Shown piece by piece: positions 18,242 through 45,647 of a stretch of 64,000 bases of DNA. The notes under the pieces were generated by a model. The model was not told where the DNA came from. It did no database searches and saw only the letters and a list, made by a program, of their open reading frames with translations. The stretch covers positions 141,737 through 205,736 of the forward strand of contig NW_004797517.1 of assembly GCF_000002075.1 (NCBI RefSeq), given 5' to 3'. Position numbers and translations under genes: made by a program. Position 1 is the stretch's first letter. Every line of letters begins with the position of its first letter. The stretch comes from Aplysia californica. Its lineage: Eukaryota.

Positions 18242-18819
18242 TTTGTCTGACAACTGCAGACTCTTGTATTTACCAACACTGAAACAAAAAAGTTAATACT
18301 CAAAATAAGTTGAACTACTTGTCCGCCATTGCAAAGCTTGCAATTGTTACCATGACCACACCGGAAACAGCCCATGTACTGAAAGCTGCACAAAATGTTA
18401 ATATACTAGGCAACACTTACTAAATGTCTAATATAGTGTGATCCAGCCATCATTCATTCCAGAAGTACCTATAGTATTGGATGAAGCCTTATTGACAAAC
18501 GTTTACACTATAAAGTTAAACATTTACGACTAATAAACAAGGGAGATAACTCTTTAAACTTTTCAAAGTGGAGTGAGTTGCTATGCAACCACACACCCTC
18601 AGCGAGGTCAACGCTTGACCTGAAAGTGGAGAGGGACAGCATAGGGCTTTTGAGGACATTCGGAATAATGTAAACAGTACGGCCACTTTGTCCTGCTGGA
18701 GGTTCTAGTGATCCTTATCAAGCACTCTCGTGAAACACTGAAGAGACTTCCTTGTGTATCTTGATTTTGAAGTGAAGCATCAATCACATAGGCTAGATAT
18801 CTAGAGCGAAATCATCGAA
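18242..18819. promoter_or_regulatory. Bidirectional promoter / 5'UTR region shared by SPEF2 and CIMAP2
   Basis: 578 bp between divergent ATGs. X-box-like GTTACCATGACCAC (18346-18359) and GTTGCTATGCAAC (18577-18589); forkhead-like TAAACA at about 18517, 18534 and 18671; CCGCCATT (18323); CCGGAA (18361). Confidence 0.75.
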
Positions 18820-18869
18820 ATGGCCGAAAAGAAATTCGCTGGTGCCCCCTTTGGGACACAGACAGCAAG
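18820..18869 (+). CDS. CIMAP2: CIMAP2/LEXM coding exon 1 (MAEKKFAGAPFGTQTA)
   Basis: ATG at 18820; GAPFG motif; donor AG|GTAAAA; phase 2. Confidence 0.9.
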
Positions 18870-28126: not shown

Positions 28127-29291
28127 GACTTACAGTTGTTGTTTTTTAATCCGATACAGTCAGTCCTCAGGCTACCTCAGACCTTTCATGTAGATTTGAG
28201 CATGAGTCCTCACAATATAATATCCTTACTGGGGCAGCTCACTAGCTTTTTAGTCATCAGGCTGACAGGCCGAAGTGGCGCAGTTCCTCTGAAGTTTCTT
28301 CGGGTGATTTTATTTCTAACTGTATACATGCACAAACTTTTAGCCAAAGCCTAAAAATAATAGCATTTCCATAATTTCCACCTATCAGGAGCAAATCAGC
28401 AGCAAACGCTAGAAATAGGCTGAACTCAGAGAGAGGTGTATGGGAAAGATCAAGAAACCACAGAGTGGTTCCGCAGTGCCAAGGCAGACCAACGTATCTC
28501 TGCAAAAATCATCATTTTTTGTATCTTCGTTTTAAATGGATGCCCATACCCATTCTGCATCTGGTGTCAAAGGCAGGAAGACGTATCTGCTCTGCAAATA
28601 GGATATTTCACTATGGCAAACAGATGTAACTGAAGGGCCATGCCCATATTTCCAATGGCAGCACAACGTAGCTCAAAATCATAGAAAGTGCAGAAATGTC
28701 CCTCTGCCCTTGGCATGGCAGGGCTGCCATGCGCTGTGTGTTGTATGTACCTCTGATGATCTATTTGGTGGCAGTGTAGGGGGGCAAATTTACATTAGAC
28801 AGCACCTATCAGACAGTAGACGGATGGCAGTTAAAGGTGCAAATATTATGTTTATGGTATAGTATAGACGCTCCTTTTTTCAAACCTGGCGGTATAATGG
28901 GGGGTCAAAATAGTGAGGTTTAACTGAATATACCCTTGAACCTGCTCTATCGATCACCTGTCTATGACAGTCACCTGCACAAATGACTGCCTCCTACTTC
29001 TCCCTTGTGTTTTTTCTAATGGCGCTGTTCAAGAGGATCACCTGTGCAAGATAACCACATTTCTACTCAACAATAGATGGCCATCTTGGATTGGTTCAAG
29101 TGCATGTAAATTGAGATCGAAATCTTACCTTTTCGAGCCGAATGTATAGTATCATTTTCTTAATCTATTCTTTATTGTATCAACTGATTTGAGTCAGAAG
29201 GGGCTTAAGGAACAGAAGATATTTATAGGATGTAGGATCAGTTTATTGTTATTCAAGGAAAGTAAACATTATATCATAATTTTCCTTACAG

Positions 29292-29379
29292 ATTTGATGT
29301 TACTGGAGTTCATCCAAAGACAAAAGTGCCAGGGAGTTTTACTCAAATGCCGTATGATAAATACTCCATGTTGGAACTG
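29292..29379 (+). CDS. CIMAP2: CIMAP2/LEXM coding exon 2 (RFDVTGVHPKTKVPGSFTQMPYDKYSMLEL)
   Basis: Acceptor TTTCCTTACAG, donor GTAAGA; 88 nt; ends in phase 0. Confidence 0.92.
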
Positions 29380-29445
29380 GTAAGAGATTTGTTTTTGGCT
29401 CCTGAATCCACAATCTCATGTACTTATTTTGGCTAACTGAGACAA

Positions 29446-29891
29446 ATGTGAGGCAATGGTGAAATCAGGCGCTCGTCAAAATAATGAAATTAAAAAGAAA
29501 TCGGCATCTTTTTGGCCAATAGGCAATTCTTTTCTAATTTCTTTGGGGGGCTCAACATTTTTTATGTCCTTTTAGAAACACATTTCTGTGTGGATTTTAC
29601 TGAAAAACATTGATGAAAGGCACAAAAAATGTAAATTTTCAATTTCCAAAGACTCTTAGGCTATGGAGGTTTCCAAACTTTGGCAGCCATTTTCTCAATA
29701 ATTTTACCTCTGAAACCAGGCGACTGTGACCTCCTTCAATTGCAAATATCTCGCCTTCTATTCAATATAGATCCATTTTTTTTTCCTCCAAAAAGGAAGG
29801 CAAATGAACAGACTTTAACTTTAAGATGATACTAATAACCCCATATGCCCAAAAATTGACGAGCACCTGATTACACCACGTCATGACACAA
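29446..29891 (-). mobile_element. About 440-bp MITE-like family B; other copies at about 30050-30445 (partial), 45749-46187, 50625-51052, 52834-53290
   Basis: Subterminal inverted motif TCAGGCGCTCGTCAAAA / TTTTGACGAGCGCCTGA and a shared internal sequence in five copies. Confidence 0.75.
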
Positions 29892-29938
29892 ATAGTAAAT
29901 AAATACTTGTTCAGGTAAAAAGAACAGGAGGGTGGGAG

Positions 29939-29948
<10 letters not shown>

Positions 29949-30034
<86 letters not shown>
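29949..30034. repeat. (TA)n microsatellite
   Basis: Directly visible. Confidence 0.97.
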
Positions 30035-30035
<1 letters not shown>

Positions 30036-30474
30036 GTGGATAAATATATATCAAAATAATGAAAGTCAAGAAACTGGCATTTTTCCACAGGTTTAGGAAT
30101 TTTAATAGAATTTTTGTGTTTTGGCTCAACACCTTTCCTGCCCATAAAAGAACACATTTCGGTGCAGATTTTGCTGAAGAACTTTGCTTAAATGCGTAAA
30201 AGATGTAAATTTTCAGTTTCAATGGACTCTCAAACTAAGGAAATAACTCAATTTTGGCGGCCATTTTCTCACTTATTTTACCTCTGAAACCTGGCTACCC
30301 CCACATCCTTCAATTGCCTTGTATCGGAGATAAATGGATATTGTTTTCATCACAAGCAAGGCCAAGAGACAGGCTTTAAAACCATACGAAAAATTCCATA
30401 TGCCCAAAAATTGATGATTGCCTGATTCCACCGCGTCCTGACACTCACACATACACACACACCGACACATGCAT

Positions 30475-30527
<53 letters not shown>

Positions 30528-30577
30528 GAGGGAGAGAGAGAGAGAGAGATCGATCGCGATCGATCGATCGATCAATC

Positions 30578-30628
<51 letters not shown>

Positions 30629-30663
30629 CGATAGATCGATCGATCGATCGATCGATCGATCTA
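30475..30663. repeat. Compound (GATA)n/(GA)n/(GATC)n microsatellite
   Basis: Directly visible. Confidence 0.97.
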
Positions 30664-30952
30664 AATATATATGTACTCCACCTGAATAAAAAATCAAAGC
30701 TTCCATACACAACTTCTGCGTTATACTTTATTGTGATTGTTTTTATCCACAAACTTTTGTCTTGTCTTACTGCGTCAAGAGTAAAAAGTCTTCTATCATA
30801 CACTTGGGAAGGATTTGAATGGAAGGTGGCATTTTTTTTGTGTGTGTGTGTTTTATGACGTATGCTTTTATATTAAAATGATTGGAATACTATGTGCTTT
30901 TATTAGAGGTATGAAACTAAGGAAGAGTTCATATTCTTTTTCTCTTTTCTAG

Positions 30953-32329
30953 GAGGAAAGGAAGGCTGCTCATTATAACTTTAAAACCCGAAATCTTTCT
31001 AAAGACCATGGTGCTATCATTGCAAAGTTTGACAAACATATCAGAAATATCCGCAAGTCATTGATCCAGGCCAGTCAAACCCTTCAAGATTTTGAAACAA
31101 GTCATTCAAAGCAATCCTTTCGAAACTCTAAGTATTCAAAGTCAGGATCTTCTTTGAATTTATCATCTCCCACACAACTATCCTCAAGTAGGGTGTGTTC
31201 CGGTCTGTCAAAAAAATCGGCGGTTGTTTCCTCACATGGTTCTTCAAAGGAAAGCTCAAAATTCAATTCCCTCAGAGCCTTGGAACACTATGATTCTAAG
31301 TGTTTTGCTGAGTGGACAAAGAACAAGATTCTGATGAGCAGAAGAGCATTACTGATGAATGCCCTGTTAGGACAGGACCAAACTGTCACCGGTTTTGATT
31401 CTAGTTTCCTTGCTTGTTCATCAGAGCTATGTATAAAAGAAAAGGTGCCTTCTTCTTTAGGTAACAAACGATCAAAAAACAAAATCTTTGTTTCATATGA
31501 GCAAAATTTAACACATGATTCCACATGTAGCTGTACTCTGAAACTGAAAGATGAAGAAATTTCCGAAAAATCTGATCTTACCAGTCCTGCTAAAAAAAAA
31601 AATGGTGGTGTGAACAATAACAGTTCTGATTTTGATCACAGTCTGAGCAATCTTAATAAATCTGGTGGAAACAGAAAAGAGAATGATGCTGAACTCGAAA
31701 ATGAAAATTTGGCAATTTCCCAGCAGTCTGAAGAAGCAAAAAACGAGCTAAAAAGTGTGCTCTCATCAAGTGACGCAAAGCCAAGAGGCTCGATGGAAAA
31801 GAAGGTATCATTTGAAGAAAGTATTGGAGCGTCTGAAATGAACAGTGAAGCCGAAATAAAAGAGGTTGTTTTGAATAAAGAGGACGAAGACAATTTAAAG
31901 AGTATAAGTTTGGAAACAGGGACAGAGTCATCAAGCTCTACAAGAAAAGACAAGGGATTGGAAACGAAACCTGTTGAGAAAAAGTCAGACAGGAAGAAAA
32001 GTGAAACCAAGGAGCTCCAATCTGAAGCCTCGATTTCAAACACCCTCACTAATGATGACGGTGAAAGTCTTTTCCTTGACTCTGATATAGAAGCCTGTCC
32101 TTCAAATGTGGGTTCCGCAGAAGGATCTACCACCGGAACTTCAAAACCTCTCAGAAAGGCTTTAGACAGTGAAAAGGAACTCTTCACATCAAAAGGTGAA
32201 GGTGCAGAAAGTCAAGATAAGACTAAAGTTGAAATGTCGACTGATGAGGATAGAGGTAGATTATTTCAAGGCTTAGCCGAATGTAAGACCCAAAAAAAGG
32301 AGCCCAGTGAGACATGCGATGAATTTTTG
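30953..32329 (+). CDS. Candidate large cassette exon of CIMAP2/LEXM; 459-aa Ser/Glu/Lys-rich low-complexity insert
   Basis: Strong acceptor TTCTTTTTCTCTTTTCTAG, whose TAG is the in-frame stop bounding the ORF; 1377 nt without a stop; donor TTG|GTAATA; phase 0/0, matching intron 2; overlaps ORF 31061-32434; no transposon motifs recognised. Confidence 0.65.
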
Positions 32330-32857
32330 GTAATAATTGTGTTTCTTAACACGCACATTTCTTGTTTGTTATATTTGCCTTGTAATTTTGGTATGAGTAG
32401 CGTTAAAATTTTCTGTTTCTTGATGTTCGATTGATCTTTTAGCAAAACATACAGTTACAGTTTTGTAACAATACACACAGTTTTCAGTTCTTCAGTGAAC
32501 TTGTACTCTGATTATAATATATTGAAACTTTGTTGGTTTTTTTGTAAAAACATTTGCTTGCTTTGTTGCTATCAAAGCCATTTGTATATTTTTCAGTGTA
32601 TCCTTGCTTTCATTTCACTTTAATTGTTTTGCAGTTTATTCCGTTTTTGGAAGCTACATGTTCAAAGGTTTTTTCATTCAAAATATAATTAATCAACTCT
32701 GGAAAATTCTTCCAGATCTCAGGGGTAGTCACCTGCTGGTCTTAAACCTGCAGAGCAACTGACTTTTATTATGTAACTGATTTTCCTACTTAATAGGACC
32801 CTTTGCCTTCAGGCTGCCATATTGTGATTCTGAAGATACTCTCTATTTTATTTTGTA

Positions 32858-33431
32858 TGAGGGACGTCCAGAGAGTAAGCACCGTTTTCACATCTCTCTA
32901 AACTGGGTTGGGATATTCCCGATTTTGCACCACATATGAGTTGATGTGTTCAATACTGAACCAGAAAGAGCCCTCAGCTTCCGTCTTGCCGTTGTAAACA
33001 ACAATCTACAACTCTACAACGCTTGTAAAACATTTCACCCAGTTTTTTGCTCGCCAGTTTACACAGCCCCATTTTGTATCAAACATCCTACACCCATTTG
33101 AAGCTTCAACATGTCTTCTAAGCTTGAAAATTATGCTGACAGTGAAATTCGGCCTGTTATTCATTTTCTGACTGCAAAGAACACGAAGCCTATCGACATT
33201 CGTAGGCAGATTTCTGAAGTGTATGTTGAAAATGCAATGGCATGGGCAAAAGCGTGGTGCGGAAATGGGTTCATGTTCAAAGAGGGACGAGATAATGTGC
33301 ATAATGAACCCAGGAGTGGGCGTCCCTCTTTGGTCAGTGAAGATTTGATAAACAAAGTTGACATTAAAGTAAAGGAAGTTTTACCCTTTCCTCACTCTCT
33401 TCAAACTTTCCTGAGATTTCCTGATTGTTGA
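32858..33431 (+). mobile_element. 5' fragment of a mariner element (HTH_48-type N-terminus)
   Basis: TA-TGAGGGACGTCCAGAGAGTAA left end; EIRPVIHFL...IRRQISEVY...FKEGRDNVHNEPRSGRPS. Confidence 0.85.
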
Positions 33432-33676
33432 AGTCTGAAATAGTCATAATGACAGGATGGCAGTCGTGATATCAATACCATAGAATCAAACACTTAGATC
33501 TATTACTATTGTATCAATCTCAAAGAGAATTTAAAAAGCAAAATAATTTGACTGAAGCACTTAGGTTTCAGTTGTTTCTTTTCATAAAACAGTGACACAC
33601 TTACCCTTCAACAATCGTTTGACTTTAAAATGTTTTTCCAAGATACTGAAATTTTTTAAATGATGATTCTTCACAG

Positions 33677-33847
33677 AAACGAAAACTTGGACCAGGCACC
33701 TATAATACAATGATTGGTGGATTTAGTTCTTCAAATGTTGAGTTAAAGGCCTCTGGACCAGGTTGGGCTCGTCAGATCGAGGTAGAAAGGCTGGCTGCTC
33801 TTCCTCATCTCCTTCACAAAGAGCAGTGGGAGGAAAACAAAATGCTG
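33677..33847 (+). CDS. CIMAP2: CIMAP2/LEXM core exon 3 (KRKLGPGTYNTMIGG...EQWEENKML)
   Basis: Acceptor TTCACAG, donor GTTTGT; 171 nt; GWARQIEVERLAALPH motif. Confidence 0.92.
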
Positions 33848-34112
33848 GTTTGTTGTTCACTTTTTTATAGCATTTCTGTCCTTTTCACAACATGTATGTC
33901 CCTGTTGTGTATTTGTAAATGTATTTCAATCTCAGTTTATTCACTCTGAGAAGTAGGGCATTATTTAAAAAATTAACACAGCAACAATTCGATAATAATA
34001 TTTTATGCTATGTTTACATAATATTAAACATTCCATCAAATGTTTTTTTTAAGTCGGGCATTGGAACCATTAGTTTGTGCTGGCATTTGTGTTACTTTTT
34101 CTTACTTCACAG

Positions 34113-34235
34113 AAAAGGAAACTGGGCCCTGGATCTTACGAGATCAAAGACTTTATTCAAGCTGGTAATGAAAAACCACGCAGTGAGAGAGGTATCTGCA
34201 GCAATCTGGCCCCCAGATTTGAGAGAGGTGTTTTG
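34113..34235 (+). CDS. CIMAP2: CIMAP2/LEXM core exon 4 (KRKLGPGSYEIKDF...RFERGVL)
   Basis: Acceptor TTCACAG, donor GTATGT; 123 nt. Confidence 0.93.
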
Positions 34236-35358
34236 GTATGTTTTTCAGACTCTCAACAGATTTTTTGTTCAATGTGTTGGGGTTTTTTTGTTTTGTTTTT
34301 TTGTGTATTTAAATGAAATGTAGTAAAAATATTTGATGTTCCCTGTTGATTAGTTTTCCCTTTTCCTGAGCAGTTACGAATTATATTGTTCTTTGGTCCT
34401 CTGTGTAGAAGGGAGAGATAACTAATAATACTGTCAAACCACATTATTCCTCCTCTATGAACAAGCATGAGGTTAGCGATATAACAGGATAACACCGATT
34501 GGCCTTTTTACTAGTTGTACATTGATAAAGGCTAGAGATAACTGTGGCCAGTCTTAACTCATCTAGATCTGTCTTGCATGATTGCCATAGGCAGGAGCAG
34601 AAATGAGTAGCACCCAATTACAATATGTACAACACCAGCTGAACTTTAGGCATACATAAATTCCAATTGAAAATTTCTACCGGATCAGAAGCTTAGCTAT
34701 GATATATGTGTCAAGGACTCAGTAGACATCTAGTTTTTTATTTTTTACCCAACAATTGTCAGTTCTCGGGCGGCCTCAGACTTTTCATGTAGACTTGAGC
34801 ATGAGTGGTCAAAATACAAAAACGTCAAGGGCGTCCGCCAGCCTCATGATCTGGCACATCCTAACAGAGTATTCAGACTTTGGAGAGACGTGTAGGAAAT
34901 ATTTTGAATTGAATGCACTAATTTGAAAATTTTGTTCTATATCTTCTATTCCAACAAAATTCTCGATTTTATAGCCAATTGGTCTTTACTCAAACATATG
35001 GATAGTATTATGTAGATTTTAAATTAAAATGTAAGATACTCTTTTCAAAACTGAATTCTCACTCTGAAATTTTTTTGCTTCAACAATTCTGACTTTGCAA
35101 AGTTAAACCAAGATGTGCTGTGAAATTCAATGTGAAAACACCCAACTTGAGTGCCGCGCGCTCACATGATCTTATGCAGAGTTGTAAGTGCCATTATAAA
35201 ACTATTAAAAGTTGAAACGGGATTTTGAATTTTGAGAGCAGTTTCTAATACTTGGTTTCTTGATAAGGTATGGAATATTTAGATCTGGTATTGAATACAA
35301 ACGTTAGTGCTGTAGGTTCGTGGAATAAAAAGAGAAACAAGTATATAAAATAATTTTA

Positions 35359-35702
35359 TCTAATGTGATGGTGAAATATGTCATTATTTTATCATTCCCA
35401 TTCTAATGTGATGGTGAAATATGTCAGTATTTTATCATTCCCCTTCTAATGTGATGGTGAAATATGTCATTATTTTATCATTCCCCTTCTAATGTGATGG
35501 TGAAATATGTCATTATTTTATCATTCCCATTCTAATGTGATTGTGAAATATGTCATTATTTTATCATTCCCATTCTAATGTGATGGTGAAATATGTCAGT
35601 ATTTTATCATTCCCCTTCTAATGTGATGGTGAAATATGTCATTATTTTATCATTCCCATTCTAATGTGATGGTGAAATATGTCATTAATTTATCATTCCC
35701 AT
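35359..35702. repeat. Minisatellite, 8 x 43 bp
   Basis: Unit TCTAATGTGATGGTGAAATATGTCATTATTTTATCATTCCCAT, head-to-tail with few variants and no spacers. Confidence 0.95.
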
Positions 35703-36343
35703 ATGTATTAAGTATGACCCAAAAAAGAGAACAAGCAGTATTTTCCAACACAAAAAGTATGACCCATAAAGGAAACATGAAGAGCAGGAAGGGGTAGGTA
35801 TTTGAAAATGCTTTTCCTGCAAAAATTATGAAAATCCCATTCATAGACTCATGCCTAGAGATTGTTAAAATGGATGCTTGAAGCATTCTTGGCATTTTGT
35901 GAACATTCAATTGCTGGTTGACAAGAATCAAATTTTGTAAAGGACCCTTGTTTCCTTTTTGGAACATAAAGTAGGGTGAAGGTAAAAGAATTTGTTCTCT
36001 ATCATTGATCCGAACAGAATTCTTGATTGTATAAAAACCGTTGGTCTTTTTTCCAAACTGCAAACAGTAAAATTGAATTTTTACTATGTATAATAAGGTA
36101 TTTCAACCATTCCAACTTGCAAAGTAAAGCCAAAACGTACTTATAAGAACTAATGTGAAAACAACCAACATGTTTGTTACATGATCAGCTAACCTTATGC
36201 AGTTAGTTGCAAGCACTATAAAACTCTTGGCAAACAAACTAAAAAATGTATAACCTCTACCAGGATATATATATATATATATATGTCTCTTTTTGAACTT
36301 CTTGATAATGTAAAGACTGTGATGTTTTACTTTTCCTTCCAAG

Positions 36344-36478
36344 AGTGCAACACCAGGCCCAGGAACCTATGGCATTGGTGGAGTACCACAGAGAGCACTG
36401 GAACAGAAGGACAAGATTGCAGCCAGTACTAAAGGAATGCTTGATGCTGGTGACCGCAAACGTAATTTACCTTCAGTG
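36344..36478 (+). CDS. CIMAP2: CIMAP2/LEXM core exon 5 (SATPGPGTYGIGG...RNLPSV)
   Basis: Acceptor TTTTCCTTCCAAG, donor GTACGT; 135 nt. Confidence 0.9.
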
Positions 36479-37437
36479 GTACGTTGTGCTGACATCATTT
36501 GCTCTGTCTCAATTTAATTATACATTTGAATCATGTAACTTCCCATTGTCCATATGGTAGCTGAGAGTCCTTGGGCAAAGGAGAACTTGACAATAAAAGC
36601 AAATCTGAGCAGCAAGCTGCTCTGAGGCTTTCCCCCTGTCATAAGAGAAGATGAGCCAGTTCATGATATCCCGCATCCGGGTCAAAATGACTCATAGCAT
36701 TATAAAGAGCTTTCTGTTTTCTCATAACCAGTTATTTTGACTTGCATTTGGCCTCTTAAGTCTCCCCTCTTCTCAGACCATGTTTGCAACAAGTTATTGT
36801 ATATTTTATACTATGTTTTGAATCTACATTTTTTACGTGTAGATTTCTCCTTTATATATTATATCAACATTTTTCTTGATTGTAAATGTTCAAGATATAA
36901 CATTTGAGACCTGAGTTCAATTTCCACTCAAATAATATATTTAATTACTTTGCAGCTGAGTAAAGGAATACATCTGAGTAGTTCACAGAGTTAAACAGTA
37001 AAGCAAAATTAATTACAATGCCTTCTAATTACTTCATCGAAGGTCTATGACCTATTTATGTTTACAATGACCAAATGCATGACAAACTTAAGTTGAAAGT
37101 GAAATCAATGTCATTTGTTTCCTTCTCTTTTATTAGGGGTTTGGATAGGGCTGTTAACCCCTTGGACTAACCTCTTCTCTTCTGCGCCCATAGAATTAAC
37201 AGGCCTGAACCAAGTAGTGCAGGCCTGTAGAATTTACGGGACTATGACAGAGGTTGTTTTAATACCAATTATATGGGAAGGTGTTGCTAAAATCTTGTAA
37301 TTGTTATTGAGGTACCTTCCCTTTATGTTTACCGCCATTTCACCCCCATTTGAAAGCGGCAGATCCAGATTTTGTCTCGAAGAGAAGATTAGATCTAGAT
37401 ACATCTACCACACAAAAATATTTTACTTACATGTTTA

Positions 37438-38100
37438 CGAAGGGGGTTCAAGAAGTCTTTGGTCTAAATATGAAGGAATAAAGATAGAGTTTTGTAACAT
37501 GGCACACATTCCTTTATTTTTCTACATAGTCACCATGCAGACTAACACATTTCTGCCACCTCTCTTCAAAAGTCCTTGAGAGAAAAATGACCCAGAAACT
37601 AACCAGTCTTCGACAGCTCCAATGGTGTCCTCATTGTCATGGAAACAACGTCCTTTGAGTGGTTTTTTAAGATTAGGAAACAGAAAAAAGTCTGAGGGGC
37701 TAGATCTGGTAAATAAGCTGGGTGTGGCAGGATTTCAAAACCACACTGTTCTGCTGTCTGGACTGCTTGTTGGGCCCTGTGCGCGGGGACATTGTCATGC
37801 AGTTGGAGGATCCCATTACAGAGTTTTCCACGCCTTTATCTCACCAATTCAGACCGCAGTTTTATCAGCAAACCTGAGTAGTAGTCTCCTGCGGCTGTTT
37901 TTCGATTTTTCAGGTAGTCAGTCATGGTGATACCTTCACAAAGTGGTACGCTGAAGTTTTGCAGAAAACACCCGCTGCACTCTATAATTGAAGTCTTTAA
38001 ATCCCCGGCCAGGTCAGGGCCTGTCCTGCATCTTTTTTCTCCTCGAAAATCGAGTTGGGAACCTTTTCATGCAGATGCAATGTTAGCTGGGGGGGAATGT
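37438..38100 (-). mobile_element. 3' fragment of a mariner (DD34D) element
   Basis: TA-CGAAGGGGGTTCAAGAAGT end; minus strand LHDNVPAHRA and HPAYLPDLAP..DFFLFPNLKKPLKG. Confidence 0.85.
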
Positions 38101-38201
38101 TCTCTCGTGACCGCAAGTGGTAAAGTTACTCTATCATCATAAAAATAATAAGTTTCTACTACAATTGAGGCTAGATTTAAAAAATGTTCTTCATAAATTA
38201 A

Positions 38202-39244
38202 CTCATTCGCTACGTATTATTTTCGGCTTGTGGACGAATTTTTTTTCTGGAGGGCGAATGAGATGATGACTAGTGGGCACTTAAAAGGTCTTTGTGGCCA
38301 CAAATTCAAATAAATATCAACGTATTATATACCAATATTTTCAGTATGGTTTGTAGAATACATCTGTAATGTTTATTTATGTATTTTTCAACTTTGGTTC
38401 CTGTAAGAGGCGATTATGCAACACAATTTTGATTGGATGCGGATAAAATTTGAAAATAAAAAATTAATAATCTTTGCTGAAACTCAAAAAATATATTTGC
38501 ACCTAGTCAAGTGATGCATCAAAATAACCAAAAATGAATATATAGAACTGGAAAATATTGAAAAGTTTGCAGTTATTTACCTACATTCCATAATTTTTGT
38601 ACATTTTGAACACAACATCCGATATTGAAAAAAAAATAAAAAATTGTATAATCTTGAAAAATGATCACAAACAGAATAAACCCACTCGTATCTAATATGG
38701 AATTATTCAGAATTGCATTTGGAATAACCTATACATGTCTTGAGAGGCACTTTTTGTGTAATTTCATCAAAAGCAGTGATTTTAGGGAGAAAAAACATAT
38801 TTTGACAATTTAGATCTAGACCTAAATCTAGCACTCAAAAATATTGATTTCTCAATAACAGTGCATTGGCAATATGAGTCCATTCGTATCAATATTATAA
38901 AAAAGAGTCCTACATTTCTTTAGTGGGCAAAATAAGGATAGATTTTGTTGTGTAAAATTACTAAGACTGGTGTCCGGGCTATAATTTTGGCATCGCGATA
39001 AAACAAGGTCGAATAAACTACGAAATCGCATTTCAAAACTGATTCTAAATTTCCGATTTTCAGTGGAAATGCTTGACCCGGAAGTCAACATTATATTATG
39101 ACCTTTATTTTAACATGGATATGTGGATTGGAATAGAATCTAAGCTAAAATTGAAGATTGGTTCTCGGGCCGCCGGGGGCGGCTTAGCATACTGACAGCA
39201 CTTGACCCGCGCCGCCCCCCCCACGGCTCGGCGTAGCGAATGAG
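38202..39244 (+). mobile_element. piggyBac-like MITE family A, copy 2
   Basis: TTAA-CTCATTCGCTACG...CGTAGCGAATGAG-TTTA. Confidence 0.88.
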
Positions 39245-39984
39245 TTTAAAAAAGGCATAAATCTCTGTCACATAGAAAATAGATTATTGTTCACAGCACT
39301 TCCAACTTCCCATACACATTTTGCATACGCATTATATATGGTCTACATCACAGCCCACCACTTTTTAGTGTCAAAACTTGATACAAGAAATCAATTTTAT
39401 ATAATGAACACATTTTTTGCACTAAAGACTCTCAAAACATGCATTCAATAAGCACAGTATCACGATTTTTTTTTAAATGACGGATTTGCTTTTAAAAGCG
39501 ATATTGCCCCAGCTGCAAACCTTTTGAAATATGTAGAAACCACCCACTTGGACTTTTTATTAGTATTTATGAAGGAATTTTCTAGAATATGGCTGACAAA
39601 TGTATACAAAAATATTGATCTGTAAAAACAAATTGATCCAAGCCATTGTGCACAAGCTGGAGAGTCTATGTTCGACAGTAAAGGAAATATTTGACAATAA
39701 GTTGCGCCATAAATTTTTTATTGCACTATACATAGCCTACTTATTATCATCGTATCAGACAAATATAATGTTTTGTTCTGATGGTTTTAGGATTACATTA
39801 AAATTTTGTATATTGTAATTGTAATCATGAACTATCTACACTGCCTTTATGACCAGTTTTTTGTCCCTACGACTAAATAGTTAATTTTTTGCTTTTTGTT
39901 TCTTTCTTTTAAATGTGTTTTGTGCCCTTTCGATTCAATCTAAATCATTTAGATCATTTTGGAGGTGGACTTTGACCCTGTCTG

Positions 39985-40115
39985 TCAGGACCAACCTCGG
40001 GCTTAGAGGGATGCAACATCTCAGCTGAGATACACTATAAAAATTCTCACCACATGGACTTCGAACCCAGGCCTTTTGTGTGTGATCGCAAAGCACTTGA
40101 CACTAGACTTAAGAC
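39985..40115 (-). mobile_element. Degenerate tRNA-derived SINE fragment
   Basis: Minus-strand B-box GGGTTCGAAGTCC with an upstream A-box-like AGTCTAGTG. Confidence 0.45.
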
Positions 40116-40377
40116 ACTGATAATACGTACATTTGAACTCAACAGGGTTCAATCAGTGTCTGTTTGATAATTGTTAGGCACTTCACCGTTGAACTTGGAA
40201 CATGTTTTGTTATCCAGAATGGGAAAGTTTTTTTATGAGGTAGATCCTCTTGTCAGCGAGGATGTTGCACCCTACTCAGATCGGGTTGGCCACGACAAGC
40301 AGGGTTGAAGCAGCCTGCCTCCAAAATGATATGAATCGTGTCAATGGGGATGTAAGAAATTTTTATTTTTCCAACAG

Positions 40378-40521
40378 GGTTCAGAACTTGGCCCAGGGAC
40401 CTATAAGCACAAGACTTGCACTGAGGAGATGCTCAACAAAGTCACCAGCCTCAAGGGCCCCTATGAGTTGTACTCTGGTGACCGCAACAAGCCTATTTCG
40501 GAAGGGTACTTGGCTGCTCCT
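40378..40521 (+). CDS. CIMAP2: CIMAP2/LEXM core exon 6 (GSELGPGTY...GPYELYSGDRNKPISEGYLAAP)
   Basis: Acceptor TTTTTCCAACAG, donor GTAAGT; 144 nt. Confidence 0.93.
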
Positions 40522-41029
40522 GTAAGTTCAAAATAAGGATATTTTTTAGATTGTTCATCATTTGGCGGGGTTTTTAAATATCTTCTGTACATTATAATGC
40601 ATATATATATATACATATATAAGAAACCAACAGTTGTAGCTTTTTTAATTAGAGGTAAACCACTCTAAGCTCAAACTTGAAAAAGCAATTTCTCAAACTC
40701 AAATGTCTGTCCATATATGCTGAACAAAAATAGCTTCTTTGCATTCTCTGCAACCAAAATTTTCTGGCATGTATTAGTTTAGCCCCTTTGAGACATACGG
40801 CATAAATCGCGTCACTGGGTGACCTTTTGATGAAAGATGAATTGTACAAAATCAGCTGATTCTGACTATACCCAGGATCTTATAACGTGCAACGTATGGC
40901 ATCATTTAACTGATGATAACACATTGTCAGCAGTTGTACCATGAAATAAACTTCAAATTTGAAAGGGATTTTTAATCTAATTTAGTGTAATTTTTTTTCC
41001 TTCATGTTTTGAGGTTAAGAATCTCGATA

Positions 41030-41895
41030 TAGTCGAACCTGCCTTAACGGAAACCTGTGTAAAACGGAAACCTGTCTTAACGGAATCTCCCCGCTCCCCC
41101 CTTGATATATTCCTCTTTAATTACCTGTATAAAACGGAAACCTGTCCAACGCGGAAACGGAAAGAAAAATCCGCTCCCTTCTGAGGGTTTCACCTGTCTA
41201 AGACGGAAAATACTTTGCCTGCTCAGCCCTGATTTGAAACAAAACTCGCAAGTTTGGCTCCACCGGCTCTAAACTTAACGCCATGGCCATGCCGCTGGGC
41301 AAGGAAGGGGAGTAGGGGTGAAATGGGGGTAGAAGTTACCCCATCATGTGAGCCCTGAGCGATACAGATGGTCAGTGTAGTGTGGGTGTGATATCTCACG
41401 ACTGCCCATGAGAGTGCTTGAGTAGCGAGCCACTACGGAAACTTTCTTGGGTAATCAGAAGCCAGAGGTGTGAAATTAGATTGACCAATGCCTGCCGCCC
41501 TGATCGTACGGCCAGCCGAGAAAAGAGTTCCTCGAATCGTTGTTACGTTGATGGCAGTGAGGGGTGGCATTGGTGGGTGGGACTGAGGGTGGAAACCAAG
41601 GAGATGTTCATACGTTTCTGTTTTTAATAGGTCAAACAGTGGTCCTATGAAAGGCAAGCACTGGTGGTAATTGGATACGTAAGACTGACGCATGTCACTA
41701 TCAGACAGGATAGCAGCTGAAAGGTGTGAAGTTTTGACCACTGCTTGCCGATCGGACAAGCGATCCTTGATCCCACCGGCAGGGCCTTTGAACCCCCCTC
41801 CCCCTCCCCTAAATTCCCCTGTCTAAGACGGAAAATGTCTAAGACAAAAAAATTTTCCCGCTCCCTTGCAGTTCCGTCTTACACAGGTTTGACTG
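41030..41895. mobile_element. pogo/Tigger-type MITE (TA TSD) with ACGGAAA subterminal repeats
   Basis: TA-TAGTCGAACCTG ... CAGGTTTGACTG-TA; immediately followed by the left end of another MITE at 41898. Confidence 0.82.
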
Positions 41896-42990
41896 TACAG
41901 TGAAACTCAGATATGACGAAGTCGTTGGGTCTGACCTTCAATTTCATTGAATCCGAGTCTTCATTATGATAGCAATGTGAGCGACAAGTTGCGACAAGGG
42001 TCTAGCATATGACGACCTTTGTTTCCACAGACCTGCACGCAATTCTTTACTAGATCTAGATGTCTAGACTAGCATTTCATTGTTCAGTAGATGTGGGGAA
42101 GGGATGAATATGATTGTATACATGTCTGTATCTGTGCCGACTTTCCATGCCCGGAACACTTGTGCCTACGCCCCCCTCCCTCCTTTCAATCACCCCAGAC
42201 ACAAGCGTTTTAAAAGCCATAGCTGGGAGCGTCCAATACTAGTGACAACTGTCTCGTTTTATTTAGTGCTATATTTTGCTTGTTTTTCGGAACTATTCCC
42301 AAACCAAGTCTATTAGTAATGACTAAGCCTTTGTTTCCACCATTTAGAAGTTTGTTGGAGGCAAGCTTTTGAGATTATAATGAGACATAGTGCACAAGAT
42401 TTAGGTGATTGTAGAAAAAACTCAGGGAAACAGTGGAAAAACCCAGGGTTTAAAGAGTTAAACTACAACTTCTATAACTACCTCTGCTGCAACAACTGCA
42501 ACTACTGCTACTGCAATTAAAATTACAGTAGCTTTTGTGTAAGAATCTGGTGACTAGAAGGAAAACAACGAGTTTTTACGTGGACCAGGGCATTAGGAAA
42601 GTTTTAAGGGATGAAGTACAGTTAATTCCAGAGGGTTTTCTCATTCATTCATTCTTTACTGAAATAAAACCTTTTAGCAATTGTAGAGCCCGGTTAAAGG
42701 CAAAGTGGCTATTTATGCTTGAATGTGCTTTTGTTTCAGAAAGATAGACTCTTTGTTCAACTGAATGGAAGAGAAATCAGAACCAATCAAAAACCACTCA
42801 ATGGTTGATCCAGATTGCTAATGTTCTAGCCTTAACAGTTCTTTACTAGAACGTTATTGTATTGTATTGTATAGATGATACATTCCTCCCCCCCCCCCCT
42901 TACTTCACTCCCATCCATAAGTGAGTGGGCTCCTGTAAAAAAGTGTTTTGAAGGCATGATTTCCCCAAGTTACATTTGTCTTTGTTCTAG

Positions 42991-43158
42991 AAACTTGCTG
43001 ATCTTGGCCCTGGCCAGTACGAGATCGGAACATTTGTTGATGAGCTCAAGGGCCCACACAAAAATATACATGGCAAATTTGGCAAGATGTCACAGTATCC
43101 CGATGTCCCCACTGAAAGACTTTTCTTGTTTTCTCAAGCACATTATCCCAAGATGAAG
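42991..43158 (+). CDS. CIMAP2: CIMAP2/LEXM core exon 7 (KLADLGPGQYEIGTFVDEL...PTERLFLFSQAHYPKMK)
   Basis: Acceptor TTTGTTCTAG, donor GTCAGT; 168 nt. Confidence 0.93.
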
Positions 43159-43191
43159 GTCAGTAAAGAGCCGCATAGAGTTGTTCTTTAA

Positions 43192-44243
43192 CTTATTCGC
43201 TACGTATTATCTTGGGCTTGTGGATGATTTTTTCTCGGGAGGGTGAAATGAGATGATGACTAGTGCGCAGTTCAAAGGTCTTTGAGGCACAAATTCAAAT
43301 AAATATCAACATATTATACACTCCAATTTTCAGTATGATTTGTAGAATATGCCTACATCTGTAATGTTTATTTGAGTATTTTTCAACTTTGGTTCCTGTA
43401 AGAGGCGATGCAACACAATTTTGCTTGGATGCAGATAAAATTGAAAAAAAAAAAATTAATCATCTTTGGTGAAACTCAAAAAATATGTTTGCACCTAGTC
43501 AAATGATAGTCCTACATCAAAATAACCATAAATGAACATAAAACTGAAAAATATTTTAAAATTTGCAGTTATTTAACATTCCACATAATTTGTACTTTTG
43601 GATCATAACATCCGATATTGAAAAAAAATATTTTTATGAACTTGAAAAAAGGACAAGATGCATTCACAAACAGAAAAAACCACACATATATCTTATTTGG
43701 AATTATTCAGAATTGCATTTAGAATAAACCTACACATGTCTTAAGTGGTACATTCTGTTATTTTCACACACAAAAATAGTGATATTGGGGAGAAAAAATG
43801 TTTTGACAATAAAGATTTAGCTTTGAAAAATATTGATTTCTCAATAACAGAGCAGTGCCAATTTGAGTCCATTTTACAAATATAGTATCAATATTCTAAA
43901 GAAGAGTCCTACTTTTCTTTAGTAATCAAAATAATGATACATTTTTTTGTGTGAAAGTACTAAGACTGGTGTCTGGGCTATAATTTTGGCATCGCGATAA
44001 AACAAAGTCACATAAACTTCGAAAACTGAATCAAAATTTACGATTGTTGGTGGAAACGCTTGACCCGGTAGTCAACGTTATATTATAACCTTTATTTTAA
44101 CATGTAATGGATATATATATGGGTTAGAATAAAGTCTAAGCTAAAATTATAGGTCACTTCTCGAGCTGTCGAGGGCGGTTTGCTGTAGTAAAGTCACTTT
44201 GGCAGCGCCAGGCCGCTGCCCACGGCTTGGGGTAGCGAATTAG
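43192..44243 (+). mobile_element. piggyBac-like MITE family A, copy 3 (more diverged)
   Basis: TTAA-CTTATTCGCTACG...GGTAGCGAATTAG-TTAA; starts 33 bp after the exon 7 donor. Confidence 0.85.
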
Positions 44244-44442
44244 TTAAAGTATTGCATGTTGGTACAAAAACAGTGGGACCCACCGTAACCGTGTTACATT
44301 TAAGATTCTTATCCCCTGGTTTGATGTTCTACTTCAAATTTAAACTGACACTTGCTTAAATTACATTTGCAGTTTCAAACCTCTATTTTTTTGTTGAACT
44401 ATAAGTATTGAAATCGATTTGTTTGAATTTACTTGAAAAATA

Positions 44443-45289
44443 CAGTGGAACCTGAATGCAACAAAGTCGTCAGGCCTGAACTTCAATTTCGATGAATCTG
44501 AGTGTTCGTTTATAGCAAACAGGAGGTTTTTGTGCAGACAATTAGAAGCACTGAGCAAGTAATATATAAAGGGAAGTAACTCGTGGTAGGCTACCGGGAA
44601 ATGCCTGCTTTTTTTGCCCCTCGATTTTCTCAATCCAAAGTAGTTTGGTTTCAAATGAGAGGCATTTTTGTTTCTTTGACGTCGTACCAAAGAAATGCTG
44701 GAAAAATCCTGGAAAATACACTGATCGTTAGAGCCTAGCATAGCATATGGCAAAATTTGATTCAACAGACCAATGCACAATTCATAATGTAGATCTATGT
44801 CAAAAGTAGCTTAATCATTGTGATACTTGATCAGTAGCCAGAAGAAGAAATGGCTGACATATTTGTATCTCTACTGACATTCCGAGCCTGGACCACTTGT
44901 GCCCCCTCCCCCAAGACACAGGTACTGTCATATATGTGTGTTGGCCGCCTGCCCAACACCGACACATGCTAGGACAAGTGTGCCAACAATGCATGTGTTG
45001 GTATTAAAGAAGCTAGGCTGCTGATTTGTCACATAGACTAAGTGAATAATAGTCATGATGCAAGTGCCATGGATGGTTACCTGGAATAAGTAAGGTTCGT
45101 TTCAGAAGGAAAATGAGTGAAGCCACATCAGCGGGGACTGTTCACCCAAGCAACATCATTGAATCCGAGCTTGCTCATTTATGTGTGTTCGTTGAATCCA
45201 AGTTATTTTTATTTATTTTAATGAATAAAAAAAATAGGGAATCCATCTCCTTTTGTTGAATCCGAGTCAATTGAATCCAAGTTCCACAG
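44443..45289. mobile_element. pogo/Tigger-type MITE
   Basis: TA-CAGTGGAACCTGAATGCAAC ... TTGAATCCAAGTTCCACAG; TTGAATCCGAG repeats; left end resembles the sequence at 41898. Confidence 0.7.
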
Positions 45290-45518
45290 TGTAGCTTTAT
45301 TATGTCATGAACCTGGAAGTTTTAACTGTTCAAATCAAGCCATTTAATAATAAAGGAGGGATTAAATCAATGCAATTTTAATTGTGTTTAGTTCTTTAGT
45401 ACAGTATCACAGTAAATTGATGTTCGAGATTTTGATACTTGTCCAGACTCGACTCCTGTGTATAATCTTTATGTGTTTATTGTCTGATCTTTCATCACTC
45501 TGTTTCTGTCCTCTGCAG

Positions 45519-45647
45519 GACTCTCCTGGACCAGGAACGTACTCCTTGCAGGAAATGAGCAAACCACGACATGTGAACAGTCCTGGCTTCCTGTCCTCAG
45601 CGAAGCGGGATGACAAAATCTCTCAGAAATTCTTTACAAGGAACTTT
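45519..45647 (+). CDS. CIMAP2: CIMAP2/LEXM core exon 8 (DSPGPGTYSLQEMSKP...FFTRNF)
   Basis: Acceptor TCCTCTGCAG, donor GTATGC; 129 nt. Confidence 0.92.

What the first reader, a model, noticed from the sequence alone, without database searches (positions are those of the whole stretch)
30953..32329. Hidden 459-codon symmetric cassette exon that would more than double CIMAP2/LEXM
Seen: a 1377-nt stop-free frame in AT-rich intron 2. It starts exactly at a strong acceptor whose own TAG is the upstream in-frame stop, so it has no start of its own. It ends at TTG|GTAATA and is phase 0/0, like the host intron. Exons 2 and 3 also join directly and match recalled vertebrate LEXM collinearly, so inclusion looks optional (407 versus 866 aa). 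The insert has a basic helical N-part (IAKFDKHIRNIRKSLIQASQTLQDFE), a Ser-rich part and a long acidic E/K/S/D region that is probably disordered; I recognise no family. Inference: a lineage- or tissue-specific (for example sperm) long isoform of an axonemal doublet-binding protein, with a large projecting arm before the PG repeats.
Basis: partly seen in the sequence, partly recalled or inferred. Interest (0 to 1): 0.8.

Follow-up and report, generated by a model that had tools for sequence, protein, structure and literature searches.

The report
Real giant optional exon in axonemal gene

Summary

**The frame.** Window 30953-32329 (+) is a 459-codon stop-free frame. It is bounded by ...ttctag| and |gtaata and is phase 0/0. 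It is the longest open frame in the window, has a chance probability of about 1e-14, and shows strong codon periodicity. It is single-copy in the genome.

**Transcript evidence.**
- In run X1 a 3612-nt contig joins exon 2, this exon, exon 3 and exon 4 exactly at the predicted junctions.
- In run X7, from an independent study, the assembly graph branches exactly at the end of exon 2 and rejoins at the start of exon 3. The inclusion branch has depth 32.8 and a direct 29379>33677 joint has depth 240.
- So both isoforms exist. Inclusion is about 100% in X1 and roughly 12% in X7.

**The insert.** It has no Pfam family and no hit among 1.84 billion representative proteins. It is predicted to be mostly disordered, with a confident N-terminal helix. 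The first 200 residues are basic and the last 259 are acidic.

**The host.** It is a PG-repeat (SHIPPO/STPG) gene with one repeat per phase-0 exon. CIMAP2 orthology could not be tested exon by exon.

**Best reading.** This is a lineage-restricted, tissue-switched projection segment, analogous to Big tau exon 4a. Tissue, translation, conservation and annotation status remain untested.

The parts
18577..18589 (+). X-box-like palindrome GTTGCTATGCAAC, about 50 nt upstream of the 5'-most transcript base recovered; a possible RFX site of a ciliary promoter
Evidence: Read directly. The RFX reading comes from general knowledge and was not tested.
18639..18869 (+). Exon 1: 5' UTR plus ATG at 18820, 16 codons and 2 bases (MAEKKFAGAPFGTQTA, then AG of an Arg codon), donor AAG|gtaaaa
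   Evidence: The 30-nt loose end of the X1 and X7 contigs before exon 2 maps uniquely to 18838-18867. The loose part is 229 nt long in X1. Sequence. The 5' limit of 18639 assumes exon 1 is contiguous.
29292..29379 (+). Exon 2 (88 nt; completes the Arg codon, then FDVTGVHPKTKVPGSFTQMPYDKYSMLEL), ends in phase 0
   Evidence: Covered by X1 record 1 and X7 record 14. The X7 contig stops exactly at 29379, which is a branch point.
30928..30952 (+). Polypyrimidine tract and acceptor ttcatattctttttctcttttctag; its TAG is the in-frame stop just upstream of the exon
30953..32329 (+). Cassette exon, 1377 nt, 459 codons, phase 0/0. Encodes a helix (about residues 2-52), a Ser-rich basic part (net +16 over residues 1-200) and an acidic E/K/S/D part (net -19 over residues 201-459)
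   Evidence: Fully covered and spliced on both sides in X1 record 1 (depth 59) and X7 record 19 (depth 32.8). Single copy in the genome and at single-copy depth in DNA run X3 (65 against 60-70 in unique flanks).
32330..32335 (+). Donor gtaata
   Evidence: RNA depth drops to 0 just after it in X1 and X7, so there is no read-through.
33677..33847 (+). Exon 3 (57 codons, KRKLGPGTY...EENKML), phase 0/0
   Evidence: Joined to the cassette exon and to exon 4 in X1. Joint 33846/7>34112/3 is seen in X1 and X7.
34113..34235 (+). Exon 4 (41 codons, KRKLGPGSYEIK...), phase 0/0
   Evidence: Weak SHIPPO-rpt match of 14.3 bits.
36344..36478 (+). Exon 5 (45 codons, SATPGPGTYGIGG...), inferred from sequence only
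   Evidence: AG/GT borders, phase 0, GPGxY repeat. Lies outside the stretch on which reads were laid.
40378..40521 (+). Exon 6 (48 codons, GSELGPGTYKHK...), inferred from sequence only
42991..43158 (+). Exon 7 (56 codons, KLADLGPGQYEIG...), inferred from sequence only
45519..45647 (+). Exon 8 (43 codons, DSPGPGTYSLQ...), inferred from sequence only; later exon(s) and the stop codon were not located
   Evidence: SHIPPO-rpt 16.5 bits and 18.1 bits.

Best explanation
Window 30953-32329 is a genuine, alternatively spliced, protein-coding cassette exon of the PG-repeat (SHIPPO/STPG, CIMAP2-like) gene that starts at 18820.

**Shown.** The exon is spliced in frame between exon 2 and exon 3. It is present in essentially all transcripts of one sample and in a minority (about one in eight, a rough figure) of another, where exon 2 joins exon 3 directly. 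The exon is single-copy, kept open over 459 codons, and has coding-type periodicity.

**Predicted.** The 459 inserted residues are mostly intrinsically disordered. They have one confident long N-terminal helix, a basic Ser-rich first 200 residues and an acidic last 259 residues.

**Inferred.**
- PG-repeat proteins of this kind lie along protofilament clefts on the outside of axonemal doublet microtubules.
- Repeat-like motifs lie on both sides of the insert: AP-F-G...R and PG-F in the first 46 residues, and six or more GPGxY repeats after it.
- The insert would therefore loop out from the microtubule surface as a long flexible projection.
- The basic part could touch the acidic tubulin tails, and the acidic part would be repelled outward.
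- That would change spacing or the recruitment of partners in the cell type that includes the exon. This is the same logic as the large optional disordered exons of tau (exon 4a, Big tau) and high-molecular-weight MAP2.
- The sequence evolves fast or arose within the lineage, since nothing similar is detectable elsewhere.
For: **Splicing**
- X1 record 1 (3612 nt, depth 59) is collinear with 29290-29378 | 30952-32328 | 33676-33846 | 34112-34235. A one-base ambiguity puts this at 29379/30953 and 32329/33677. A 229-nt upstream part maps to exon 1.
- X7 comes from a different study 11 years later. Record 14 ends exactly at 29379. Record 19 is 29+1377+29 nt at depth 32.8. Record 20 starts exactly at exon 3 at depth 300. 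One contig at depth 240 joins 29378/9 to 33676/7 with GT..AG ends.

**Why X1 and X7 behave as RNA**
- Their contigs total 32 and 110 Mb, against a 927-Mb genome.
- Depth is zero in unique intron and present only on exons and high-copy repeats.
- The genome has a single copy of the exon, with its introns, so the intron-less contig is not a retrocopy.
- Transcriptome-sized runs of at least four studies hold the exon.

**Coding**
- P(open by chance) is about 8e-15 and it is the longest open frame in the window.
- 3-periodicity has p = 6e-12 and the same position pattern as the host exons.
- Phase is 0/0.

**Not a repeat or transposon**
- One match in the genome.
- Single-copy depth in DNA run X3, while neighbouring intron parts reach 1e3 to 1e5 times that.
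- No tandem repeats inside the exon.

**Disorder**
- AlphaFold2 mean pLDDT is 48.5, with 310 of 459 residues under 50. The helix at 2-52 has pLDDT 85-90 over residues 21-50.

**No relatives**
- Pfam found nothing significant, the word search nothing, the exhaustive HMMER search 0 hits, and the Atlas nothing.

**Host family**
- GPG-Y is invariant in six exon-repeats.
- There are weak SHIPPO-rpt matches.
- The repeat profile hits a solved 'Sperm-tail PG-rich repeat' chain (E = 0.024) and sea-urchin ODF3 (E = 0.13).

**Location of such proteins**
[quoted passage not shown] In mammals CIMAP2 is found in sperm only, in the same protofilament cleft as CIMAP3.

**Analogy**
- Big tau exon 4a encodes about 250 aa, acidic and disordered, with length conserved while the sequence diverges (PMC12896622).
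Against: - All transcript evidence is from assembled contigs, not raw reads. The only raw-read RNA run laid (X22) has no reads on any exon of the gene, so there are no read-level junction counts.
- The tool's label for X1 and X7 is 'RNA? (a guess)'.
- The skip joint in X7 is printed with the label '1377 letters between', which is ambiguous. I read it as a separate direct-junction contig because its depth (240) differs from the inclusion contig (32.8) and because the contigs break exactly at the two exon borders.
- Contig depths are poor measures of expression.
- No evidence of translation.
- No orthologous sequence was examined, so purifying selection is inferred only from the open frame and periodicity.
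- The structure model has no alignment behind it, so low confidence is expected in any case.
- CIMAP2 orthology and microtubule binding of this protein are not shown.
Confidence: 0.8

Rival explanations
1. The exon is spliced in but is not translated into a functional segment. It would be a young, neutral exonisation of intron sequence, or of a decayed older coding piece, whose open frame has not yet been broken.
For: There are no relatives anywhere. The composition is low-complexity and disordered. Inclusion is only about 12% in X7. Third-position GC (0.34) equals intron GC.
Against: An AT-rich intron would stay open for 459 codons with P of about 8e-15. Codon periodicity is strong and host-like. 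Inclusion is the only form assembled in X1.
Confidence: 0.08
2. The open frame belongs to a separate nested gene, or to another transcript unit, in the intron rather than to the PG-repeat gene.
For: It lies 1.5 kb and 1.3 kb away from the flanking exons, and its sequence has nothing in common with the PG repeats.
Against: It has no start codon of its own, since a TAG immediately precedes it. Contigs from two independent runs join it directly to exon 2 and exon 3 of the host. RNA depth is zero on both sides of it.
Confidence: 0.02
3. The frame is a relic of a transposon or retrocopy, and the spliced contigs are assembly chimeras made through shared repeats.
For: The intron is full of repeats: 29388-30550 is at huge depth and 32880-33460 is moderately repeated. 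Tc1/mariner-type fragments occur in the window.
Against: The exon has a single match in the 927-Mb genome and single-copy depth in the DNA run. It has no Pfam or transposase match. The joins fall exactly on AG|...|GT sites in two runs of different studies, and no 31-mer is shared between exon ends that could cause a chimera.
Confidence: 0.02

Closest known systems
CIMAP2 (LEXM) and the CIMAP1/ODF3 group: sperm-tail PG-rich repeat (SHIPPO/STPG, Pfam PF07004) proteins on the outer surface of axonemal doublet microtubules
   Same: The host gene carries six or more GPGxY repeats, one per exon. It has weak PF07004 matches. Its repeat profile finds solved axonemal PG-repeat chains. An X-box-like palindrome sits just upstream of the transcript start. 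In mammals CIMAP2 is an outer-surface, sperm-only protein (PMC11779644).
   Different: No known member, as far as my searches and reading went, carries a 459-residue disordered insertion. The insert itself has no relative. Orthology to CIMAP2 rather than to another PG-repeat protein was not established.
Big tau: MAPT exon 4a
   Same: Both are one very large optional exon in a microtubule-binding protein. Both encode an intrinsically disordered, largely acidic segment whose primary sequence is poorly conserved. Inclusion is cell-type dependent and roughly doubles the protein (PMC12896622 and PMC10179842).
   Different: There is no sequence relation. The host family and the microtubule structure differ (axonemal doublet against neuronal microtubules). 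The insert here is about 460 aa, not about 250, and has a basic first half. Conservation of length across species was not testable here.
High-molecular-weight MAP2 (MAP2a/b against MAP2c)
   Same: Large alternatively spliced exons add a long projection domain to a short microtubule-binding isoform. This is established knowledge recalled from memory and was not tested here.
   Different: Analogy only. There is no homology, and the MAP2 insert is much longer.

Membership tests
Alternatively spliced cassette exon | Transcripts with the exon spliced to both neighbouring exons | tested here: met
   X1 record 1 and X7 record 19 join 29379>30953 and 32329>33677.
Alternatively spliced cassette exon | Transcripts that join the neighbouring exons directly | tested here: met
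   In X7 one contig at depth 240 joins 29378/9>33676/7 with GT..AG ends. The contigs break exactly at 29379 and 33676/7, which marks a branch point. The row's label '1377 letters between' is ambiguous, and there is no raw-read confirmation.
Alternatively spliced cassette exon | Frame kept with and without the exon | tested here: met
   1377 nt = 459 codons, phase 0/0, no stop.
SHIPPO/STPG PG-rich repeat proteins (PF07004) | Several PGPGxY-type repeats | tested here: met
   G-P-G and Y are invariant in six exon-repeats. The repeat profile hits PDB 9y6s_4F 'Sperm-tail PG-rich repeat' (E = 0.024) and 8snb ODF3 (E = 0.13).
SHIPPO/STPG PG-rich repeat proteins (PF07004) | Whole protein over Pfam's gathering score (20 bits) | tested here: inconclusive
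Single exons score 14.3, 16.5 and 18.1 bits.
CIMAP2 / LEXM orthologues | Best sequence match to CIMAP2 rather than to other PG-repeat proteins | tested here: inconclusive
   Exon-by-exon searches of solved chains gave only E of about 1 matches to ODF3 and CIMAP1B, or nothing. Exons are too short for the length-bound homology search.
CIMAP2 / LEXM orthologues | Bound in an outer protofilament cleft of sperm doublet microtubules; sperm-restricted expression | not testable with these tools
   This is known for mammals (PMC11779644). Run tissues are coded here.
MAP projection-domain exon (Big tau 4a type); a 'works like' comparison, not homology | Large optional exon encoding an intrinsically disordered, acidic segment of a microtubule binder | tested here: met
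   310 of 459 residues have pLDDT under 50. Residues 201-459 have net charge -19, but residues 1-200 have net +16. Optional inclusion is shown.
MAP projection-domain exon (Big tau 4a type) | Sequence homology to MAPT exon 4a or MAP2 | tested here: not met
   0 hits in the exhaustive search, so this is an analogy only.
Transposon-derived (exonised repeat) exon | Further copies in the genome or a transposon protein domain | tested here: not met
   One genomic match, single-copy DNA depth, no Pfam domain.

The most novel reading that the evidence does not exclude
The exon is a lineage-restricted, possibly intron-born coding exon. It acts as a near-complete tissue switch (about 100% against about 12% inclusion). 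It converts a small doublet-surface PG-repeat protein into a two-anchor protein with a flexible loop of about 460 residues that projects from the axoneme. That would be an axonemal counterpart of the Big tau / HMW-MAP2 switch, which has not been described for CIMAP-type proteins as far as my searches and reading went.
Probability: 0.25. Interest if true: 0.6.

Novelty: new variant of a known kind. Interest (0 to 1): 0.38.

Why it matters
[quoted passage not shown] A natural pair of isoforms that differ by a 459-residue disordered insertion between PG-repeat motifs offers a handle on that question. One can ask whether these proteins only staple protofilaments, or also present projections that set spacing or recruit partners.

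It is also a clean example of a very long (1.4 kb) internal cassette exon with no detectable homologue. That bears on how large disordered coding exons arise and are maintained.

Tried and rejected
- **Family and homology searches of the insert all drew blanks.** Pfam gave only sub-threshold noise, DUF5660 at E = 0.066 and DUF1299 at E = 0.19. The ESM Atlas gave no usable hit. The word-based search gave none. Exhaustive HMMER over 1.84e9 representatives gave 0 hits, not even a self match. So the exon is in no protein of that collection. Whether this organism's public annotation is in the collection could not be checked.
- **Fold search was not run.** The model is mostly below pLDDT 50, so matches would be meaningless.
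- **CIMAP2 orthology by exon-wise searches of solved structures.** These gave only chance hits (Pin1, tyrosinase, thioredoxin) or E of about 1 matches to ODF3 and CIMAP1B. One search failed because of my own frame error, and alignment A1 used a wrong frame for exon 5, corrected in A2.
- **Do other SHIPPO-repeat genes of this genome carry giant exons?** The 784- and 442-aa 'open frames' next to repeats on C334 and C4 are runs of N. This was a dead end.
- **Nested gene, transposon relic and chimera readings** were rejected; see the rival explanations.
- **The ORF at 33111-33431** recalled a mariner-type N-terminus to me, but Pfam gives nothing, so I do not claim it.
- **The joined spliced models** (short and long isoform) were not built or searched.
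- **The last exon(s) and stop codon** were not located, so the 407 and 866 aa totals are unverified.

Full report
**1. The observation**

- Window 30953-32329 (+) is a 1377-nt, 459-codon frame without a stop.
- The acceptor is ttcatattctttttctcttttctag|GAGGAA. Its TAG (30950-30952) is in frame, so the open frame begins exactly at the exon's first base. The donor is TTTTTG|gtaata.
- With the local stop-codon frequency (0.068 per codon), the chance of 459 open codons is about 8e-15, or about 1e-9 expected in the whole window on both strands. The next longest N-free open frame in six frames is 222 codons; longer ones (up to 241) run through N.
- Base use differs strongly by codon position (chi2 = 64, p = 6e-12). 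Five intron stretches of the same length gave p = 0.008 to 0.95. The pattern (A/G-rich first position, T-rich third) is that of the host gene's exons.
- There is no tandem repeat inside the exon.
- Composition: S 79, K 54, E 48, L 41. Residues 1-200 are net +16 and residues 201-459 are net -19.

**2. The host gene**

- The exon map is: exon 1 ends at 18869 (ATG at 18820), exon 2 is 29292-29379, exon 3 is 33677-33847, and exon 4 is 34113-34235.
- From sequence alone, exons 5 to 8 are 36344-36478, 40378-40521, 42991-43158 and 45519-45647.
- All exons from exon 3 on are phase 0/0. Each encodes one repeat with invariant G-P-G-x-Y.
- Single exons give sub-threshold matches to Pfam SHIPPO-rpt (PF07004): 14.3, 16.5 and 18.1 bits against a 20-bit cut-off for a whole protein.
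- A profile of the six repeats finds a solved 'Sperm-tail PG-rich repeat' chain (9y6s_4F, E = 0.024) and sea-urchin sperm ODF3 (8snb, E = 0.13).
- So the host is a PG-rich-repeat protein of the kind found on axonemal doublets. Whether it is the orthologue of CIMAP2/LEXM could not be decided. Exon-wise searches of solved chains gave only chance hits or E of about 1 matches to ODF3 and CIMAP1B.
That step is left out.
- An X-box-like palindrome, GTTGCTATGCAAC, sits at 18577-18589, about 50 nt upstream of the 5'-most transcript base recovered. I did not test this further.

**3. The decisive test: transcripts**

The run search found 19 runs holding the exon. I laid four of them on window 29000-34800.

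- **X3** behaves as DNA. Its contigs total 1126 Mb and depth is even (60-70) over unique exon and intron.
- **X1** (2011) has contigs totalling 32 Mb and **X7** (2022, another study) 110 Mb, for a 927-Mb genome. Both have zero depth on unique intron, and depth only on exons and high-copy repeats. They behave as transcriptomes, although the tool marks 'RNA?' as a guess.
- **In X1** one contig of 3612 nt (depth 59) lies on 29290-29378, 30952-32328, 33676-33846 and 34112-34235 without a letter between the pieces. The one-base offsets are the stated cut ambiguity. Its 229-nt upstream part ends with a 30-mer that maps uniquely to exon 1.
- **In X7** the exon 2 contig ends exactly at 29379. A 1435-nt contig holds 29 nt of exon 2, the 1377 nt, and 29 nt of exon 3 at depth 32.8. 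The exon 3/4 contig starts exactly at exon 3 at depth 300. One contig at depth 240 joins 29378/9 to 33676/7 with GT..AG ends.
- Contigs that break exactly at the two borders show a branch in the assembly graph, meaning two paths between exon 2 and exon 3. The depths (32.8 + 240 against 300-319) add up.
- The printed label of that joint ('1377 letters between') is ambiguous. I state this as a caveat.
- The genome holds only one copy of the exon, with its introns, so the intron-less contig cannot come from a retrocopy.
- **X22**, the only raw-read RNA run laid, has no read on any exon of the gene. It neither supports nor contradicts.

**Result.** The exon belongs to this gene, is spliced in frame, and is optional. 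Inclusion is the only assembled form in X1 and roughly one transcript in eight in X7. Contig depths are rough.

Transcriptome-sized runs of at least four studies hold all or part of the exon. Four runs of a second species label hold 7-12% of its 31-mers. That would fit an expressed orthologue about 7% diverged.

**4. What the insert is**

- It has no significant Pfam family and no look-alike in the Atlas.
- The word search found no homologue of 252-803 aa.
- The exhaustive HMMER search found no hit of any length among 1.84 billion representative proteins.
- It is single-copy. In the DNA run it sits at single-copy depth, while the intron beside it (29388-30550) reaches depths of 1e4 to 5e5. It is therefore not a repeat or transposon relic.
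- AlphaFold2 without an alignment gives mean pLDDT 48.5, with 310 of 459 residues under 50. It shows one confident long helix (residues 2-52, pLDDT 85-90 over 21-50), weaker helices at 104-138 and 244-270, and a short C-terminal helix at 431-445 with pLDDT about 76.
- I did not run a fold search on such a model.

**5. How it most likely works**

*Shown:* optional in-frame inclusion, a sample-dependent ratio, and coding-type sequence statistics.

*Predicted:* mostly disordered, with a basic front half and an acidic rear half.

*Inferred:*
[quoted passage not shown] CIMAP2 is found only in sperm, in the same protofilament cleft as CIMAP3 (PMC11779644; PMC13406575).
- Here the first 46 residues already contain repeat-like motifs (GAPFGTQTARF, VPGSF), and the main repeats follow the insert.
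- The 459 residues would therefore form a loop projecting from the microtubule surface, not an N-terminal arm.
- The basic, Ser-rich part could touch the acidic tubulin tails. The acidic part would be pushed outward.
- The nearest working analogy is Big tau. One large optional exon (4a, about 250 aa) adds an acidic disordered domain whose length is kept while its sequence diverges (PMC12896622). HMW-MAP2 is similar (from memory). This is analogy, not homology.

**6. Rivals**

- *Neutral exonisation that is not translated.* Unlikely, given the 8e-15 chance of the open frame, the periodicity, and full inclusion in X1.
- *A nested separate gene.* Contradicted by the contigs and by the lack of a start codon.
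- *Transposon relic or assembly chimera.* Contradicted by single copy, by exact AG/GT joins in two independent runs, and by the absence of any transposon domain.

**7. Novelty and score**

- Large optional disordered exons in microtubule binders are a known kind. In a CIMAP/PG-repeat protein I found none described, and the sequence is an orphan. I therefore class it as a new variant of a known kind.
- It may already be present as a predicted isoform in the public annotation of this genome, which I could not check. That would lower the novelty.
- The tissue, translation, conservation and function are open.
- From memory only, the assembly size of 927,310,431 bases in 4332 pieces matches a published sea-hare (Aplysia californica) assembly. 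No tool confirmed this.
- Interest is moderate.

Noticed in passing
window 31602 (and 31506): All three runs laid (X1, X3, X7) read T where the reference has A at 31602. This is the second position of codon 217, next to an A run, and changes Asn to Ile. The reference probably carries a rare allele or an error there, and the frame is kept. X7 alone reads G at 31506, also a second codon position.
   Followed up: partly
window 29388-30550: The first part of the intron is made of very high-copy repeats. Word depth reaches 5e5 in the DNA run, against 65 for unique sequence. More than a thousand polyA RNA reads in X22 share only a core of about 33 nt at 29457-29491 and run on into unlike sequence. 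The stretch also holds (TA)43 at 29949-30034 and (ATAG)45 at 30475-30660. It is probably a MITE-like element present in many transcripts.
   Followed up: no
window 32880-33460 (ORF 33111-33431, +): A moderately repeated element (DNA depth 300-530 against 65) holds a 106-aa ORF. It is also present at low depth in the RNA-like runs. Pfam gives no family.
   Followed up: partly
window 592-1128 (+): This ORF has a sub-threshold Tc3-type transposase HTH match (PF01498, E = 2e-5, 25 bits against a 31.5-bit cut-off). It looks like a Tc1/mariner relic.
   Followed up: no
window 18577-18589: The X-box-like palindrome GTTGCTATGCAAC lies about 50 nt upstream of the 5' end of the transcript contig of the PG-repeat gene. 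It is a possible RFX site in the shared head-to-head promoter noted earlier.
   Followed up: partly
runs X9-X13 (organism B), against window 30953-32329: Four transcriptome-sized runs of a second species label hold 7-12% of the exon's 31-mers. This is a lead that the exon exists and is expressed in a close relative.
   Followed up: no
L002 (G000:C334:511500-518500) and L003 (G000:C4:1528500-1533000): Other SHIPPO-repeat exons of this genome score over the Pfam cut-off (36.2, 28.2, 27.3, 25.3 and 24.9 bits), so there are at least two more PG-repeat gene loci. The very long 'open frames' reported beside two of them are assembly gaps (N), not exons.
   Followed up: yes
window exons 3-8 (33677-45647): Every exon from exon 3 on is phase 0/0 and holds exactly one GPGxY repeat. 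Any of them could be skipped or duplicated without breaking the frame, which is a modular gene structure.
   Followed up: partly
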